Virus record (IMG/VR): IMGVR_UViG_3300020477_001008
Span: 178,647 to 242,646 of that record
Length of the DNA stretch: 64,000 nucleotides
Reading direction: 5' to 3' (one strand)
The position numbers were made by a program, and so were the translations under genes. Positions 1 through 63,702 of the stretch are shown here, one piece after another. How positions within the stretch are numbered: position 1 is the first letter of the stretch; each line of letters begins with the position of its first letter. The notes beneath the pieces were generated by a model that searched no databases, was not told the DNA's origin, and saw only the letters and a program-made list of their open reading frames with translations.

Positions 1-2
1 AA

Positions 3-1412
3 ACAGCACCGTCGACACTTATTACACAAAAGATAGAACAGATAGATGAAAGACTAGTTCGTGAAAATGCTAAAGTAGAAAGATTTACATTAGATTTAGA
101 AAGATTAAACACAGGTACTAACGTAAGAATAGATACATTAGTAGATACAGAACAAGGCAAATTAGATTCAATTTATTCACGTATTGATAAAGAGATTGCT
201 GATATTACAGCAATTGCTAATACAAGTATTAATACGCAAAAAGAAAGAATAACTCAAGCTAAAGAAAGAGCTGATAGAGATATTGCACAATTAAATGAAG
301 CTAGAGCAAAAACTTGGGGTAAGAAAAGAATTGATGATGAAATAGCAAAGATTAGAGATAATGAATTAGCTGTGGCGGCCGCGGCACAAAAAGAAATAAT
401 AAAAATACAAGAAAAATTAAATGTTGATATACAAGCTATTAAAGACAAATATCAAGCTAGTATTGATGCTATTACAACCAATGTAACAAAGTTAACAGGC
501 GAAGCTGAAGCTACAACAGGTGAAATAGAAGTCAAAGCAGATGAACTTGAAGGAAAACTTACAGTTGTATATGCTAATATTGATGATTTAAATGAAGAAA
601 AATTTGTACTACAATCACAAATTAAAGAGATAGAAGTTGAAGTAGGACCAATAAAATACATAGCAGAATTTGTATATGGTATGGAAGCAGATGCTGATCT
701 ATTAGAAAAATCAGTTAGATGGGTTATTATTATAATTATATTTGTATTTGATCCACTTGCAGTATTATTATTGATTGCGGCAAACTTCTCTTTAAAAAGA
801 AGATTTGGTAGTGATATGGAAGAAATGGTTGAAGCCAAATTTGGTGGCGGAAAATTAGATGACTATTGGAAAGATAGATATCAAGATATGAAAGAAGATC
901 TTTCAAGATTTAATAAACAAAAAGAACACCAAGATACTACACAAGAAGAACATTCAGTTAGTGCCTCATATAATTTAGGTGAAGTTAATGTTGATAATAC
1001 TGATCAATCAGTTGAAGATTATTTAGATGAAGTACAATATGATATAGATCCTAAAGAATTTGAAGGTGTAGAAGAAAACGATTTAGGTCATCCAAATTAT
1101 GATTTAATTAAAGATGAAGAAACAGGTAAAAAGAAATATTGGGAAGACCAAAATAAAGAAGAACAGCTAGAAAGATTTAAACAGCGAGAAGAAGAAGAAA
1201 AACAAGCACTAGAAGAATATTCACGTAAAGCTAGGGAAGAAGATGGCTTTGATCCAGATGAAGTTGAAGGATATGAAGAATTTAATAAAAATTACGAGAA
1301 TAAAGAAGATGACGAATCAGTTAGTATTGCTGAAGATGAAGTAACGCCAACTATAATTGAAGATGTTAAGATTACAGATCTATCCGATGAGGATGTTAAA
1401 AAAAAGACTTAA
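3..1412 (+). CDS. Coiled-coil membrane protein (DUF4407-like phage protein), 5'-truncated by window edge
   Basis: Frame is open from base 3 (the ORF track starts it at GTG 372). Long heptad-like region, then GPIKYIAEFVYG...WVIIIIIFVFDPLAVLLLIAAN transmembrane segment and an acidic tail. Confidence 0.6.
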   Translation, partial: TAPSTLITQKIEQIDERLVRENAKVERFTLDLERLNTGTNVRIDTLVDTEQGKLDSIYSRIDKEIADITAIANTSINTQKERITQAKERADRDIAQLNEARAKTWGKKRIDDEIAKIRDNELAVAAAAQKEIIKIQEKLNVDIQAIKDKYQASIDAITTNVTKLTGEAEATTGEIEVKADELEGKLTVVYANIDDLNEEKFVLQSQIKEIEVEVGPIKYIAEFVYGMEADADLLEKSVRWVIIIIIFVFDPLAVLLLIAANFSLKRRFGSDMEEMVEAKFGGGKLDDYWKDRYQDMKEDLSRFNKQKEHQDTTQEEHSVSASYNLGEVNVDNTDQSVEDYLDEVQYDIDPKEFEGVEENDLGHPNYDLIKDEETGKKKYWEDQNKEEQLERFKQREEEEKQALEEYSRKAREEDGFDPDEVEGYEEFNKNYENKEDDESVSIAEDEVTPTIIEDVKITDLSDEDVKKKT

Positions 1413-1618
1413 AAACCAGGAAAGAGAGAATAAAAAAAATTGACATCAACGATGAAATTAGTGTACAATTAAAAGAAGTAAAAAAAACTATTGATATGGA
1501 AGGCATTAATCAAAGAACTCAAAAAACACTGGCACTCAATCACGGAGCAAAAGGTGAGACAGTAATATCCAAGGCTGACAAAGAATGGTTAGATCAGAAA
1601 TCAGATAATAATAAATGA
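1400..1618 (+). other. A_AAA_AAG slippery heptamer (1400-1406) and 70-codon -1 frame extension ending at TGA overlapping the clpX ATG
   Basis: 0 frame GTT AAA AAA AAG ACT TAA. The -1 frame has a stop just before the A-run, then is open 1406-1615 (DLKTRKERIKKIDIND...DQKSDNNK) and ends in an ATGA overlap. Confidence 0.55.
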
Positions 1619-2907
1619 GCGATAAAGAGATTAAAATGAAATGCTCGTTCTGTGAAAAGACTAGAGCCGAATCACATAAATTAATAGCAGGACCTAAAGA
1701 AACATTTATTTGCGATGAATGTGTAAAACTTTGCCACGATATTTTAAAAGAAGGAACAATTGAAAACGAAACAAAAGAGTTTGCTATTCCTGATCCAAAA
1801 AAATTACACGGATATTTAAATGAACACGTAATTGGTCAAGATAGAGCAAAGAAAATTGTTAGTGTAGCAGTTTATAACCATTATAAAAGAATTGTTAATA
1901 ATTTAATTAAAGAAGATGGGCAAGACGAAATTGAAAAATCTAATGTTATGATGTTAGGACCATCAGGTGTTGGAAAAACACTTTTAGCTAAAAAGGTTGC
2001 TGAATACGTAAATGTACCATTTGCTATTGCTGATGCAACAACAATAACAGAATCAGGTTATGTAGGTGATGACGTAGAGAATATTGTAACAAGATTATTG
2101 CAACAAGCAGACTTTAATGTTGAAAAAGCTGAACGTGGAATTATATACATTGATGAAATAGATAAAAAAGCAAAAAAAGGTGAGAACGTATCAATTACTA
2201 GAGATGTATCTGGTGAAGGTGTACAACAAGCTTTATTAAAAATTATTGAAGGAACAACTGTTAGAGTTCCGCCACAAGGTGGAAGAAAACATCCTGGTGC
2301 AGAAATGATTGAAGTTGATACATCAAATATATTGTTTATAGTTGGTGGAGCATTTGTTGGTATAGATAAAGTTATTAATAAAAGGGCTAATAAGTCAGCA
2401 GGTATTGGATTTAATCAACGAGTAGAAACTGTTGATACAGGATTTGATGAATGCGAACCAGATGATTTAATTAAGTATGGATTAATACCTGAACTTGTTG
2501 GAAGGTTACCAGTTATAGTAGGTTGTCATAATTTAGATAAAAAAGATTTAAAAGCAATTATGCTTGATGTAAAAAATTCATTGATTAAACAATCTCAACG
2601 TTTATTTAAAATGGAAAATGTAAATTTAATTATAACTGAAGATGCAGTAGATTATGTAGTAGATGAAGCACACGAAAAGAAATTAGGTGCTAGAGGATTA
2701 AAATCTGTGTTAGAAAAAGGTTTATTAGAAATACAATATGACTTACCAGAATACAGAGATGGTGGAGTTAGTGAAATTACAGTTACAGAAAAAACGCTCA
2801 AAGGAGAAAAACCGATGCTCACTTATGAGTTTGATGCTAAAGATATAAAAGCTAAAGAAACAAAAAAAGGGAAAAAGGAAGATAACGGTACAACAGGAAA
2901 AGAATGA
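1615..2907 (+). CDS. clpX: ATP-dependent Clp protease ATP-binding subunit ClpX
   Basis: CSFC...CDEC zinc domain, Walker [34 protein letters not shown] loop, GARGL. Confidence 0.97.
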
Positions 2908-3458
2908 AACAAAGATATAGTAATTACGAGTATCAAAAAAAGAAAGCATTAATTAACGAGAATATTAGAAGTAAAGAAGTTCGTTTAATATTAGAATCAT
3001 CACAAGAAATAGTAACTACACAAGAAGCATTAAGATTATCTAGAGAGCAAGATTTAGATCTAGTTTGTGTTAGCACAAAATCAAATCCACCTATATGTAA
3101 AATTATGGATTATGGGAAACATCTATATGAACAAAAAAAGAAACAAAAAATTGCTGATAAAAAACAAAGAGAAGCTATTGTGGATACAAAAGAAATCCAG
3201 TTTAGACCAGCAACTGGAATTGGAGATCTTAAAGTAAAAGCTAAAAAGGTACAAGAGTTTATAGATGATGGAGATAAGGTAAAATTAGTAATGAAATTGC
3301 GTGGCAGGGAAAATGCTATGAAGGATTTTGCTATGGAACAATTCAAAAAATTTGTTGATTTAATTGAGAATTATGACTACGATTATAGGCCAAATATACA
3401 GGGAAATAAAATACTTGCAATTTTAAAGAAAGGTGTTATAATAAAGAACAATGAGTGA
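2904..3458 (+). CDS. infC: Translation initiation factor IF-3
   Basis: [60 protein letters not shown]. Confidence 0.95.
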
Positions 3459-3807
3459 TAAACCAAGGAAAAAATACGACATCAAAAATTTCTCTAATTT
3501 TGGGAAATTTGAGCAAAAGCGAGATCGAAGACCAAGACGTGAGCCAGATCCACCTGGTTTAGCAGTTACAGTTCACGGCGACGATGTAATGAAAGCTTAT
3601 AGAAGGCTTAAAAAGAAACTAATGAAAGATAACCTTATGGATACAATAAGGGATAAAAGATATTACAAAAAGCCAAGTGAAATTAGACAAGAAAAATTAA
3701 AAGTGCAAAGAAGGAATATGCAAAAAGCTCAAAGAGATAGAGCTATGCAATATGGTATAAGATATAAAAACTATGATCCTAGCACAGCCAAAACACGTGG
3801 CTATTAA
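3451..3807 (+). CDS. rpsU: Ribosomal protein bS21 with N-terminal extension
   Basis: VTVHGDDVMKAYRRLKKKL...RDKRYYKKPSEIRQEK matches the bS21 core. Confidence 0.85.
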   Translation: MSDKPRKKYDIKNFSNFGKFEQKRDRRPRREPDPPGLAVTVHGDDVMKAYRRLKKKLMKDNLMDTIRDKRYYKKPSEIRQEKLKVQRRNMQKAQRDRAMQYGIRYKNYDPSTAKTRGY

Positions 3808-4133
3808 TGTTCGACCAAATAAAGTTTCATCAGCACCCCACAGAGAATAAAGGCAAACAAGCTATAATAGATTTTGTAGATTACAAAATGAGTATAGTAT
3901 GCTCACCTACATCTTATGGTGGAGATAAAGGTTTGTTTGAAATTGCAGTATTTGATAAAGCTGGAGAGTTTGTTGATTTAAAAGGTATTAGTGATAAAGA
4001 TGATCAAGTACACGGTTGGTTAAGAGAAGATGAAGTTGTATTAGTAATAGAAAAATTGTGTGAAATAACAGATATGGATGTTAGATTAGTTTTATTGCGT
4101 TCAGCATTTAGGGAGAACAAAAATGATAGATGA
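3807..4133 (+). CDS. Hypothetical phage protein
   Basis: Coupled ORF; SYGGDKGLFEIAVFD resembles a motif I recall from phage hypothetical proteins. Confidence 0.65.
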   Translation: MFDQIKFHQHPTENKGKQAIIDFVDYKMSIVCSPTSYGGDKGLFEIAVFDKAGEFVDLKGISDKDDQVHGWLREDEVVLVIEKLCEITDMDVRLVLLRSAFRENKNDR

Positions 4134-4275
4134 ACTTGTAGAACAAATAGCTAGAATGAACAAAGACGAAAGAAATGAATTTGTTGAAACTCTAGTTAAA
4201 AAATGGCCTGATTTATCAGAGTCAATTTATTTTTTATTAAATGTAAATTTAATGGAGAAGGAGAACATTAAATAG
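4123..4275 (+). CDS. Small hypothetical protein (50 aa; below ORF-track cutoff)
   Basis: ATG 4123 with GGGAG upstream; MIDELVEQIARMNKDERNEFVETLVKKWPDL...; TAG 4273-4275; fills the gap before the tRNAs. Confidence 0.6.
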   Translation: MIDELVEQIARMNKDERNEFVETLVKKWPDLSESIYFLLNVNLMEKENIK

Positions 4276-4288
4276 ATGTTTAATTCAA

Positions 4289-4364
4289 GGGCGGTTAGCT
4301 CAGTTGGTAGAGCATCTCGTTTACACCGAGGGGGTCAAAGGTTCGAGTCCTTTACTGCCCACCA
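4289..4364 (+). tRNA. tRNA-Val (TAC)
   Basis: Cloverleaf GGGCGGT/ACTGCCC, anticodon loop TT TAC AC, TTCGAGT, encoded CCA. Confidence 0.97.
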
Positions 4365-4368
4365 TTAC

Positions 4369-4444
4369 GGAGTATTAGTGTAGCGGTTAACACGTCGCCC
4401 TGTCACGGCGAAGACCACGGGTTCGAATCCCGTATACTCCGCCA
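4369..4444 (+). tRNA. tRNA-Asp (GTC)
   Basis: GGAGTAT/ATACTCC acceptor stem, TCGCC CT GTC AC GGCGA, TTCGAAT, CCA. Confidence 0.97.
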
Positions 4445-18059: not shown

Positions 18060-18647
18060 ATGAGTAATTTAATTCCAATAGTAGTAGATCAAACTTCAAG
18101 AGGTGAAAGAAGTTATGACATCTACTCAAGACTTTTAAAAGAACGAATTGTATTTGTAACAGGTCCAATTGACGATTCAGTTTCAAGTGTAGTTTGTGCC
18201 CAATTATTATTTTTAGAATCACAAGATCCTAAAAAAGATATCTTTATGTACATTAATTCTCCAGGAGGTATTGTAACTTCTGGTTTAGCTATGTACGACA
18301 CAATGCAGTATGTAAAACCAGATATTTCAACTGTATGTATTGGACAGGCCGCTAGTGCTGGATCATTATTATTAATGGCAGGTACAAAAGGCAAAAGAAT
18401 TGCATTACCTCATAGTAAAGTAATGATACACCAACCATCAGGTGGATTTAGAGGACAAGCAACAGATATAGAGATTCACGCAAAAGATATATTAGATACT
18501 AAAGCAAGATTGAATCAACTATACGTTAAGCATACAGGGAAGGATCTTAAAACAATTGAACAAGCTATGGAAAGAGATAATTTTATGACAGCTCAACAAG
18601 CCATAGATTTTGGATTAATTGATAAGATAGAAGAAACCCGTGCTTAA
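18060..18647 (+). CDS. clpP: ATP-dependent Clp protease proteolytic subunit
   Basis: [51 protein letters not shown]. Confidence 0.98.
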
Positions 18648-37003: not shown

Positions 37004-37078
37004 GGTCCCTTCGTCTATCGGTTAGGACAGCGGTTTTTCATACCGCAAAGAGGAGTTCGATTCTCCTAGGGACTACCA
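37004..37078 (+). tRNA. tRNA-Glu (TTC)
   Basis: GGTCCCT/AGGGACT, GCGGT TT TTC AT ACCGC, TTCGATT, CCA. Confidence 0.96.
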
Positions 37079-58750: not shown

Positions 58751-58826
58751 GCCGCTTTAGCTCAGTTGGTAGAGCAACTGATTTGTAATCAGTAGGTCCG
58801 CGGTTCGAGTCCGTGAAGCGGCACCA
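58751..58826 (+). tRNA. tRNA-Thr (TGT)
   Basis: GCCGCTT/AAGCGGC, ACTGA TT TGT AA TCAGT, CCA. Confidence 0.97.
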
Positions 58827-58837
58827 GGCTACCACAT

Positions 58838-58913
58838 TCCTCGGTAGCTCAGTTGGTAGAGCAGTTGACTGTTAATCAATTGGTCGCAGGTTCGAGTCCT
58901 GCCCGAGGAGCCA
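58838..58913 (+). tRNA. tRNA-Asn (GTT)
   Basis: TCCTCGG/CCGAGGA, GTTGA CT GTT AA TCAAT, CCA. Confidence 0.97.
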
Positions 58914-60240: not shown

Positions 60241-60316
60241 GGGGGATTAGCTCATCTGGGAGAGCGCCTGATTTGCATTCAGGAGGTGGCTGGTTCGAGT
60301 CCAGTATCCTCCACCA
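60241..60316 (+). tRNA. tRNA-Ala (TGC)
   Basis: GGGGGAT/ATCCTCC with G3:U70, CCTGA TT TGC AT TCAGG, CCA. Confidence 0.97.
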
Positions 60317-63627: not shown

Positions 63628-63702
63628 GCGGGTGTAGCTCAGTGGTAGAGCGTCTCGTTGCCAACGAGAAGGTCAAGGGTTCGAACCCCTTTACCCGCTC
63701 CA
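63628..63702 (+). tRNA. tRNA-Gly (GCC)
   Basis: GCGGGTG/TACCCGC, TCTCG TT GCC AA CGAGA, CCA. Confidence 0.97.

What the first reader, a model, noticed from the sequence alone, without database searches (positions are those of the whole stretch)
1395..1618. Candidate programmed -1 frameshift that extends the membrane protein exactly up to clpX
Seen: the ORF ends GTT AAA AAA AAG ACT TAA. The -1 frame has a stop immediately 5' of the A-run, then stays open for 70 codons and stops at the TGA in the ATGA overlap with the clpX start, the same coupling used by real genes here. Known: A_AAA_AAG is the E. coli dnaX-type -1 slippery heptamer. Inference: two isoforms with different C-termini, with the long one translationally coupled to clpX. 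Alternatives: a one-base homopolymer assembly error, a separate 40-aa ORF from ATG ~1496, or mainly promoter DNA (TTGACA-N18-TACAAT at 1440-1469).
Basis: partly seen in the sequence, partly recalled or inferred. Interest (0 to 1): 0.7.

Follow-up and report, generated by a model that had tools for sequence, protein, structure and literature searches.

The report
Conserved poly-A frameshift before phage clpX
A membrane-protein gene of an uncultivated large marine phage ends at a run of eight A's, and comparison with dozens of relatives shows that the next reading frame encodes the protein's real tail up to clpX, so this looks like a genuine, previously undescribed programmed frameshift of a familiar type.

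Summary
The 565-aa membrane-protein ORF ends GTT AAA AAA AAG ACT TAA at 1395-1412. The -1 frame is closed by TAA at 1397-1399, then open to a TGA that overlaps the clpX ATG at 1615-1618.

The heptamer alone means nothing: 56 copies in the window against 63 expected. The comparative evidence is strong:
- Of 33 distinct junctions from independent marine assemblies, 32 keep an A8-A12 run a few codons before the 0-frame stop, with the continuation in the -1 frame.
- Of the 119 best homologue clusters, 91 end KKK plus 1-9 residues. None is fused.
- The -1 frame has no stop over the 32-57 codons before a conserved Met, against 3-11 stops in the other frames. It usually has no start codon there.
- In a sister lineage with A11, the trans-frame ORF is colinear with the C-terminus of uninterrupted relatives, at a non-homologous position in the gene.
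- The A8 stands in contigs of six DNA runs, so it is not an assembly error.

No dnaX-like stimulators were found. Ribosomal -1 shifting and RNA-polymerase slippage cannot be told apart here.

A conserved TTGACA-N18-TAnAAT promoter and a conserved Met lie inside the extension.

Verdict: a new member of a known kind.

The parts
1..1412 (+). 3' part of the membrane-protein gene in the 0 frame. The full ORF is 565 aa and starts 286 nt upstream of the window. It has N-terminal TM helices, a long coiled coil, one more TM helix and an acidic tail ending ...DEDVKKKT.
   Evidence: Only a sub-threshold Pfam Tetraspanin hit; no PHROG or NCBIfam hit. An uncharacterised viral family.
1397..1399 (+). TAA that closes the -1 frame directly 5' of the slip site, so the extension can be entered only within the A run.
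1398..1406 (+). Slip site: A8 followed by G. The in-phase heptamer A_AAA_AAG is 1400-1406.
   Evidence: Conserved as A8-A12 in 33 related junctions. A8 confirmed in contigs of 6 DNA runs and 1 RNA run.
1410..1412 (+). 0-frame stop (TAA) that ends the short 565-aa isoform.
1406..1618 (+). Trans-frame (-1) extension: 70 codons plus TGA. The predicted long isoform has 634 aa and ends in a conserved Trp-containing, Lys-rich tail.
1440..1469 (+). Sigma-70-like promoter TTGACA-N18-TACAAT embedded in the extension's coding sequence. It probably drives clpX.
   Evidence: 11 of 12 positions. TTGAC is kept in 22 of 23 relatives, with Asp always GAC although the genome uses GAC for only 20% of Asp codons.
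1496..1618 (+). Invariant Met and the 40-codon sub-ORF, called as a separate small gene by gene callers in relatives. It may be translated on its own from the internal promoter and coupled to clpX.
1615..2907 (+). clpX (zinc finger plus AAA+). Its ATG overlaps the TGA of the extension (ATGA).
2904..3807 (+). Context: an IF3-like gene (2904-3458) and an S21-like gene (3451-3807), each overlapping its neighbour.

Best explanation
The membrane-protein gene is decoded into two products. Most ribosomes stop at TAA 1410-1412 and make a 565-aa protein ending ...KKKT. A fraction shift one base back on the A run: P-site AAA 1401-1403 and A-site AAG 1404-1406 re-pair with 1400-1402 and 1403-1405. They then read GAC 1406-1408 onward for 70 more codons. 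This gives a 634-aa isoform with a conserved C-terminal module, and its stop codon overlaps the clpX start. I take ribosomal -1 slippage on A_AAA_AAG as the most likely mechanism for the window's A8 site, working without dnaX-like stimulators at a modest level. Ribosomes finishing the long isoform can re-initiate at clpX. A promoter embedded in the extension (1440-1469) gives clpX a second, independent route of expression, probably through the conserved Met 1496. Shown here: the site, its conservation, the coding nature of the -1 frame, and the lack of a start codon for its first 32-57 codons. Inferred: that shifting happens, at what level, by which machine, and what the tail does. The confidence of 0.5 is for this full statement, ribosomal route included. 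Recoding by either route (this explanation plus the first rival) I put at about 0.8.
For: (1) Conservation. 33 distinct junction sequences come from IMG/VR, JGI, ENA, Tara and NCBI assemblies. 32 need -1 (A8 x8, A9 x16, A10 x1, A11 x6, A12 x1). Run length differs among the 32 only in steps that leave the -1 relation intact. (2) No fused form. 91 of the 119 best homologue clusters end KKK plus 1-9 residues, and none of these is 600 aa or longer. (3) The -1 frame is coding. In 16 of 16 clade members it has no stop in the 32-57 codons between the run and the conserved Met, against 3-11 stops in each other frame. 10 of the 16 have no ATG, GTG or TTG there. The frame stays open across length differences of up to 25 codons. 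dN/dS is 0.17-0.59 in 8 of 10 pairs. (4) Parallel case in the same gene family. In the A11 lineage the -1 ORF has no ATG at all. It is colinear with the C-terminus of relatives whose ORF runs uninterrupted to clpX: tblastn gives two HSPs in frames x and x-1, the second with E down to 1e-13. That site lies about 150 residues from the window-type site, so the arrangement arose twice. (5) Not an error. A8 appears with no gaps in contigs of 6 DNA runs. (6) Background. A runs of 8 or more are strongly avoided in this phage's genes, 11 observed against 46.8 +/- 4.0 in synonymous shuffles, yet this one is kept. (7) For a ribosomal shift. The 0-frame codons at the site are AAA AAG, the most shift-prone heptamer in E. 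coli because the single tRNA-Lys pairs weakly with AAG (PMC5009743, PMC4066793). A8 and A9 forms coexist, which suggests the base before the heptamer is not critical. Runs as long as 9 are the efficient polymerase-slippage sites (PMC5009743).
Against: No product was observed. No upstream SD-like element or downstream stem-loop is conserved: the fold gives -3.4 kcal/mol with z = -0.06, alifold gives -0.28 kcal/mol, and Rfam finds no frameshift element. A ribosomal shift would therefore be unstimulated. The host and its tRNA-Lys set are unknown, and the contig carries no tRNA-Lys. Relatives carry A9-A12, lengths at which RNA polymerase slips efficiently. One relative, L024 with A8, needs +1, which a -1 ribosomal shift cannot serve. 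For the window's own clade, homology of the extension to the C-termini of uninterrupted relatives is not statistically significant. That argument holds only for the A11 lineage. Two further A8 runs lie inside the extension (1432-1439, 1480-1487) and would be shift-prone too.
Confidence: 0.5

Rival explanations
1. The recoding and the two isoforms are as in the best explanation, but the shift is made by RNA polymerase. Backward slippage on the A8-A12 run adds one A to a fraction of transcripts (A8 to A9). Ordinary translation of those transcripts gives the same 634-aa protein.
For: The conserved element is a homopolymer of at least 8 (8-12), not a bare heptamer. Single-base insertions dominate polymerase errors in A/T runs and rise exponentially with run length (PMC5574713). 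One added A yields exactly the -1 frame seen in 32 of 33 junctions. An A11 run before a stop gives about 20% full-length inner-membrane TssM1 in Citrobacter by this route (PMC4256274). No ribosomal stimulators were found. The +1 outlier L024 can be served by polymerase slippage (one A lost or two added) but not by a -1 ribosomal shift.
Against: The window and its nearest clade have only A8, below the run of 9 described as efficient (PMC5009743). A single synonymous change (GTT to GTA) would make A9. The one RNA contig across the site has A8, although contigs show only the majority form. The run ends at codon position 2, giving AAG or AAT in the A site, in both independent lineages. Polymerase slippage has no need for that phase.
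Confidence: 0.3
2. There is no recoding. The protein ends at 1412. The stretch 1413-1614 is the clpX promoter region plus an independent 40-aa gene starting at ATG 1496. The open -1 frame before that ATG is not translated.
For: The promoter hexamers are conserved at synonymous positions, and the Met is invariant in the window's clade. Gene callers annotate a separate 37-40-aa ORF in every relative looked up. No protein evidence for the long form exists. The heptamer is common in this A-rich genome.
Against: This cannot explain the absence of stops in 32-57 AT-rich codons before the Met in all 16 clade members, where the other frames carry 3-11 stops. It does not explain an open frame kept across large length differences, the amino-acid-level conservation there, or the strict retention of the A run and of the -1 offset. 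It cannot apply to the A11 lineage, whose -1 ORF has no ATG and matches the in-frame C-terminus of relatives.
Confidence: 0.12
3. It is an artefact or decay: a homopolymer miscount in assembly (true A9 and a single ORF), or a recently broken gene.
For: Homopolymers are error-prone. One relative (L024) differs from its nearest kin by a one-base change in run length.
Against: A8 appears without gaps in contigs of six DNA runs from several samples. The same offset occurs in 32 distinct junctions assembled independently, down to about 40% protein identity. No fused version is found among 119 homologue clusters.
Confidence: 0.03

Closest known systems
E. coli dnaX (tau/gamma) and IS3/IS911 orfAB: -1 ribosomal frameshifting on A_AAA_AAG
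   Same: The slippery heptamer is identical and in the correct phase. Two products share an N-terminal part. The -1 frame is closed just upstream of the site.
   Different: dnaX and IS911 use an upstream SD-like element and a downstream stem-loop or pseudoknot. None is conserved here. In dnaX the shifted product is the shorter one, whereas here it is the longer. The gene family is unrelated.
Citrobacter rodentium tssM1 (A11 before a stop), Thermus thermophilus dnaX (run of 9), Shigella mxiE: transcriptional slippage on A/T runs (PMC4256274, PMC5009743)
   Same: A homopolymeric A run lies just before a premature stop in a gene for an inner-membrane protein. The extended product carries a conserved C-terminal domain. 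Two length variants result. In mxiE the event also affects the adjacent downstream gene.
   Different: The window's run has only 8 A's, though relatives have 9-12. The shift needed is that of one added A. RNA heterogeneity could not be examined here. The gene family is different, and this is a phage rather than a cellular gene.
Phage lambda G/GT-type tail assembly chaperone frameshift
   Same: It is a conserved -1 shift in a tailed-phage gene that appends a C-terminal extension to a minority of the product. Such sites are recognised mainly by conservation of the slippery site and of the trans-frame ORF.
   Different: This is not a tail gene. The protein is a multi-pass membrane/coiled-coil protein next to clpX, infC and an S21 gene. 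The slippery sequence is a poly-A run, and a promoter is embedded in the extension.
Ribosome sliding on iterated AAA codons (PMC4363877) and poly(A)-tract rescue in endosymbionts (cited in PMC5009743)
   Same: Lys-encoding A runs cause loss of frame. Long A runs are avoided in genes.
   Different: Those cases are mostly unprogrammed or corrective. Here the offset and the run are conserved over deep divergence and arose twice in the family.

Membership tests
Programmed -1 ribosomal frameshift site (X_XXY_YYZ class) | Slippery heptamer in the correct phase of the 0 frame | tested here: met
   A_AAA_AAG at 1400-1406 with 0-frame codons AAA AAG. Every related run of 8 or more A's contains an in-phase A_AAA_AAN heptamer.
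Programmed -1 ribosomal frameshift site (X_XXY_YYZ class) | The trans-frame ORF is conserved as coding sequence and has no initiation codon of its own | tested here: met
   No stops in 32-57 codons in 16 of 16 sequences, against 3-11 in the other frames. No ATG, GTG or TTG before the conserved Met in 10 of 16. dN/dS is mostly below 0.6. The A11 lineage has no ATG in the whole ORF.
Programmed -1 ribosomal frameshift site (X_XXY_YYZ class) | Slippery site conserved among relatives beyond what the protein sequence requires | tested here: met
   A run of 8 or more in 33 of 33 junctions, and the -1 offset in 32 of 33. This is set against a genome-wide avoidance of A runs of 8 or more (11 against 46.8 expected).
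Programmed -1 ribosomal frameshift site (X_XXY_YYZ class) | Stimulatory elements: an SD-like sequence upstream and/or a stem-loop or pseudoknot 5-9 nt downstream (dnaX/IS911 type) | tested here: not met
   Downstream fold -3.4 kcal/mol, z = -0.06. Consensus fold -0.28 kcal/mol with no covariation. GAGG at 1390-1393 is absent from relatives. No Rfam frameshift element is found. Stimulators are common but not obligatory for this class.
Programmed -1 ribosomal frameshift site (X_XXY_YYZ class) | Trans-frame protein detected, with the junction peptide | not testable with these tools
   No proteomic data were available.
Transcriptional slippage (polymerase realignment) site | Homopolymeric A or T run long enough to slip (about 9 or more) | tested here: inconclusive
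   The window has A8. Relatives have A9 (16), A10 (1), A11 (6) and A12 (1).
Transcriptional slippage (polymerase realignment) site | Heterogeneous run length in RNA but not in DNA | not testable with these tools
   All runs are held as contigs, which drop minor variants. The one RNA contig across the site has A8.
Phage tail assembly chaperone (G/GT) frameshift | The gene lies between the major tail and tape-measure genes and encodes a chaperone-family protein | tested here: not met
   The neighbours are a PTPS-like gene upstream and clpX, infC-like and S21-like genes downstream. The protein is a membrane/coiled-coil protein with no chaperone match.
Assembly error or pseudogene | Run length differs in reads or other assemblies, or close relatives have a single ORF | tested here: not met
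   six DNA runs, no gaps; no fused homologue.

The most novel reading that the evidence does not exclude
The shift is a dosage device for a phage-built, membrane-tethered ClpXP system. On this reading only the long isoform carries the conserved Trp/Lys-rich tail, and that tail docks or regulates the phage ClpX made from the overlapping start codon. One ClpX would then be made per long isoform, next to the phage's own three ClpP homologues and its tmRNA. Selection for a mix of tailed and untailed anchor protein would explain why a poly-A recoding site arose twice, at different positions, in the same gene tail.
Probability: 0.1. Interest if true: 0.8.

Novelty: new member of a known kind. Interest (0 to 1): 0.6.

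Why it matters
Outside tail-chaperone genes and a few polymerase or transposase genes, conserved recoding sites in phages are rare. This one sits in an abundant group of uncultivated marine phages whose tmRNA is of the alphaproteobacterial type, in a gene tightly linked to a phage clpX-infC-S21 module. It shows three things. Gene callers systematically truncate this protein and invent a 40-aa gene. The same solution, a poly-A run plus a -1 offset, evolved twice in one gene family, which argues that the ratio of tailed to untailed protein is itself selected. A promoter can also be written into the synonymous sites of a trans-frame extension. The case is directly testable with a short reporter construct.

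Tried and rejected
- Megablast of the region against GenBank phages found no match.
- Pfam, PHROGs and NCBIfam gave nothing for the 72-aa extension.
- Profile comparisons of the window-clade extension with the C-termini of uninterrupted relatives were not significant: hhalign E = 0.12-0.24, and hmmsearch found only the other frameshifted lineage, L028. An earlier hhalign hit (E = 2.7e-4) came from a mixed alignment and is not used. The in-frame-homologue argument is therefore claimed only for the A11 lineage.
- No stimulatory RNA was found by folding the single sequence or the alignment, and Rfam found nothing at the junction.
- Complex prediction with ClpX plus the extension returned 'no answer' (score 0.00, partner pLDDT about 40). 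This is not evidence either way.
- Logan contigs cannot show minor run-length variants, so the RNA-versus-DNA test of polymerase slippage could not be made.
- Cultivated relatives were checked for a testable system. Pelagibacter phage Mosig has only the short 326-aa form, not next to clpX. Atu_ph07 and Phosso share clpX-IF3 but lack the membrane gene.
- Non-canonical initiation (ATT or ATA) inside the extension was considered. No such codon is conserved: the conserved ATT alternates with CTT.

Full report
**What is there.** The window is the last 64 kb of a 242,646-bp IMG/VR viral contig. CheckV rates the contig about 55% complete, and its GC content is 32%. Marine metagenomes hold it.

The finding sits at the 3' end of a 565-aa ORF that starts 286 nt before the window. 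The protein has N-terminal TM helices, a long coiled coil, a further TM helix and an acidic tail. It belongs to an uncharacterised viral family.

The ORF ends GTT AAA AAA AAG ACT TAA at 1395-1412. The -1 frame has TAA at 1397-1399, is open from 1400 to 1615, and stops at TGA 1616-1618, inside the ATGA that starts clpX. Next come an IF3-like gene and an S21-like gene, each overlapping its neighbour.

The motif alone carries no weight. AAAAAAG occurs 56 times in the window against 62.7 expected.

**It is not an error.** Contigs of six DNA runs from several samples and studies cross 1398-1405 without a gap. These include diverged strains in X8. One metatranscriptome contig spanning 1310-1490 also has A8.

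**Relatives.** Searches with the membrane protein, the -1 peptide and ClpX brought in more than 100 loci. The membrane gene lies directly upstream of clpX in nearly all of 80 phage clpX loci. The junction falls into five classes.

- **Window clade.** The 0 frame ends [V/A/L/S] AAA AAA AAG plus 1-9 codons. The -1 frame is open for 67-143 codons to the clpX start.
- **L028.** This locus has A9 and the same offset. Its extension is homologous to the window clade's.
- **A second lineage.** It carries A11, or A9 in one member, immediately before the stop. Its -1 ORF of 81-106 codons contains no ATG.
- **Inserted-gene lineages.** Here an unrelated gene of about 140 aa with its own ATG lies between the two genes.
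- **Uninterrupted lineages.** The membrane ORF runs without a break to within a few bases of clpX and ends in a Trp-Leu-Asp motif followed by Lys.

Across the frameshifted classes I count 33 distinct junction sequences. Of these, 32 need -1 (A8 x8, A9 x16, A10 x1, A11 x6, A12 x1) and one needs +1. Among the 32, run length differs only in steps that leave the -1 relation intact. One such step is GTT to GTA before the run; another is three extra A's.

In the protein database, 91 of the 119 best clusters end KKK plus 1-9 residues. None of these reaches 600 aa, so no close relative has a fused ORF.

**The -1 frame is coding and has no start.** I examined 16 clade members, looking at the 32-57 codons between the run and an invariant Met.

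- This stretch contains no stop in the -1 frame. Each of the other two frames has 3-11 stops.
- Ten of the 16 have no ATG, GTG or TTG there.
- The frame stays open across length differences of up to 25 codons.
- Replacements are conservative, for example K-I-D-I-N-D-E against K-L-D-I-Q-E-D.
- dN/dS is 0.17-0.59 in 8 of 10 pairs.

A relic frame would not stay open in 68% A+T DNA over this divergence.

**The parallel case.** In the A11 lineage, full-length proteins of uninterrupted relatives match the DNA in two pieces. The first piece runs up to the A run in one frame. The last 100 or so residues match in the frame one base back, with E down to 1e-13. Laid side by side, the motif F-S-K-K-E-K-K-T-L-D of the uninterrupted proteins corresponds to F-K-K-K-K / V-K-K-P-L-D across the run.

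That site lies about 35 residues after the last TM helix. The window-type site lies about 150 residues further on. The homologous stretch in the window's protein is in frame and has no run. The same device therefore arose at two positions in one gene family.

For the window's own clade, significant similarity of the extension to the uninterrupted C-termini could not be shown. I state this as a limit of the argument.

**Background.** A runs of 8 or more inside this phage's genes are four-fold rarer than synonymous shuffling predicts: 11 against 46.8 +/- 4.0, and none of 10 or more. Runs of 5-6 match expectation. The conserved run is thus kept against a general avoidance. Two other A8 runs inside the extension (1432-1439, 1480-1487) are not conserved.

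**Mechanism.** Both known routes give the same 634-aa product.

- *For ribosomal -1 slippage.* The heptamer is the E. coli dnaX/IS911 one. Its shiftiness there is ascribed to weak pairing of the single tRNA-Lys with AAG (PMC5009743, PMC4066793). The run ends at codon position 2 in both independent lineages. A8 and A9 forms coexist.
- *For polymerase slippage.* Runs reach 9-12 in relatives. Single-A insertions are the dominant polymerase error in A runs and rise with run length (PMC5574713). An A11 run before a stop produces about 20% full-length TssM1 (PMC4256274). The single +1 outlier, L024, has A8 while its nearest kin L114 has A12 and needs -1. It fits only this route.
- *Stimulators.* No SD-like element, stem-loop or Rfam element is conserved.
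- *Probabilities.* I put recoding at about 0.8 overall. That divides into roughly 0.5 ribosomal and 0.3 transcriptional.

They are real as well.

- TTGAC[A/T] is present in 22 of 23 clade members. Its Asp codon is always GAC, although the genome uses GAC for only 20% of Asp.
- The -10 hexamer TA[A/C]A[A/C]T sits at fixed spacing, built from xTA codons.
- Met 1496 is invariant in the clade.

So the extension also carries a clpX promoter. The last 40 codons may additionally be translated on their own and coupled to clpX.

**Function.** The role of the tail is unknown. A ClpX-tail complex prediction gave no answer. The phage also encodes three ClpP homologues and an alphaproteobacterial-type tmRNA. 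The tight linkage to clpX is therefore suggestive, but untested.

**Verdict.** This is a new member of a known kind, and the mechanism remains open between the two slippage routes.

Noticed in passing
L002:3575-3869 (own contig, about 6.4 kb upstream of the window): A phage-encoded permuted tmRNA of the alphaproteobacterial type (Rfam RF01849, 152.8 bits), with tag ADENLALAA by ARAGORN. This hints at an alphaproteobacterial host, and the tag ends in the classic ClpX degron.
   Followed up: partly
L002:5458-5615 (own contig, upstream of the window): A 158-nt match to bacterial RNase P class A at 77.5 bits, below the gathering score of 100. It spans the whole model's ends and sits next to a tRNA-Ser. 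It may be a reduced RNase P RNA or a chance or partial match.
   Followed up: no
window 18099-18638 (+), and own contig 155935-156408 and 73956-74465: Three ClpP-family ORFs in the phage (280.6, 109.8 and 101.1 bits). The phage therefore carries its own ClpXP parts.
   Followed up: no
window 4289-4444, 37004-37078, 58751-58913, 60241-60316, 63628-63702: Seven tRNA genes (Val, Asp, Glu, Thr, Asn, Ala, Gly). No tRNA-Lys is present on the 242-kb contig.
   Followed up: no
L022-L101 (about 1000-4300 in each locus): The order membrane gene, clpX, IF3 gene is conserved across about 80 viral contigs. The clpX-IF3 pair is also present in the cultivated jumbo phages Atu_ph07 and Phosso, which lack the membrane gene.
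   Followed up: partly
L054-L064, L071, L094 (about 2550-3000): In other lineages an unrelated gene of about 140 aa (starting M-T-E-E-T-Q-H-Y-Y-I-T-P-P or similar) with its own ATG sits between the membrane gene and clpX.
   Followed up: no
L024:2759-2989 (= L109) compared with L114:3141-3404: Two near-identical extensions lie behind runs of A8 and A12. The A8 form needs +1 instead of -1. This is either a natural run-length variant or an assembly slip in one sample.
   Followed up: partly
L113:1814-2329: A divergent relative (A9) whose trans-frame continuation is 143 codons long beyond the run. It lacks the TTGAC element and the Trp motif.
   Followed up: no
whole own contig: A runs of 8 or more inside genes are four-fold depleted relative to synonymous shuffles (11 against 46.8), and none reaches 10. 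Runs of 5-6 are as expected.
   Followed up: yes
window 1432-1439 and 1480-1487: Two more A8 runs inside the extension, both in a shift-prone phase of the -1 frame. Close relatives interrupt them with G, so they are probably incidental.
   Followed up: partly
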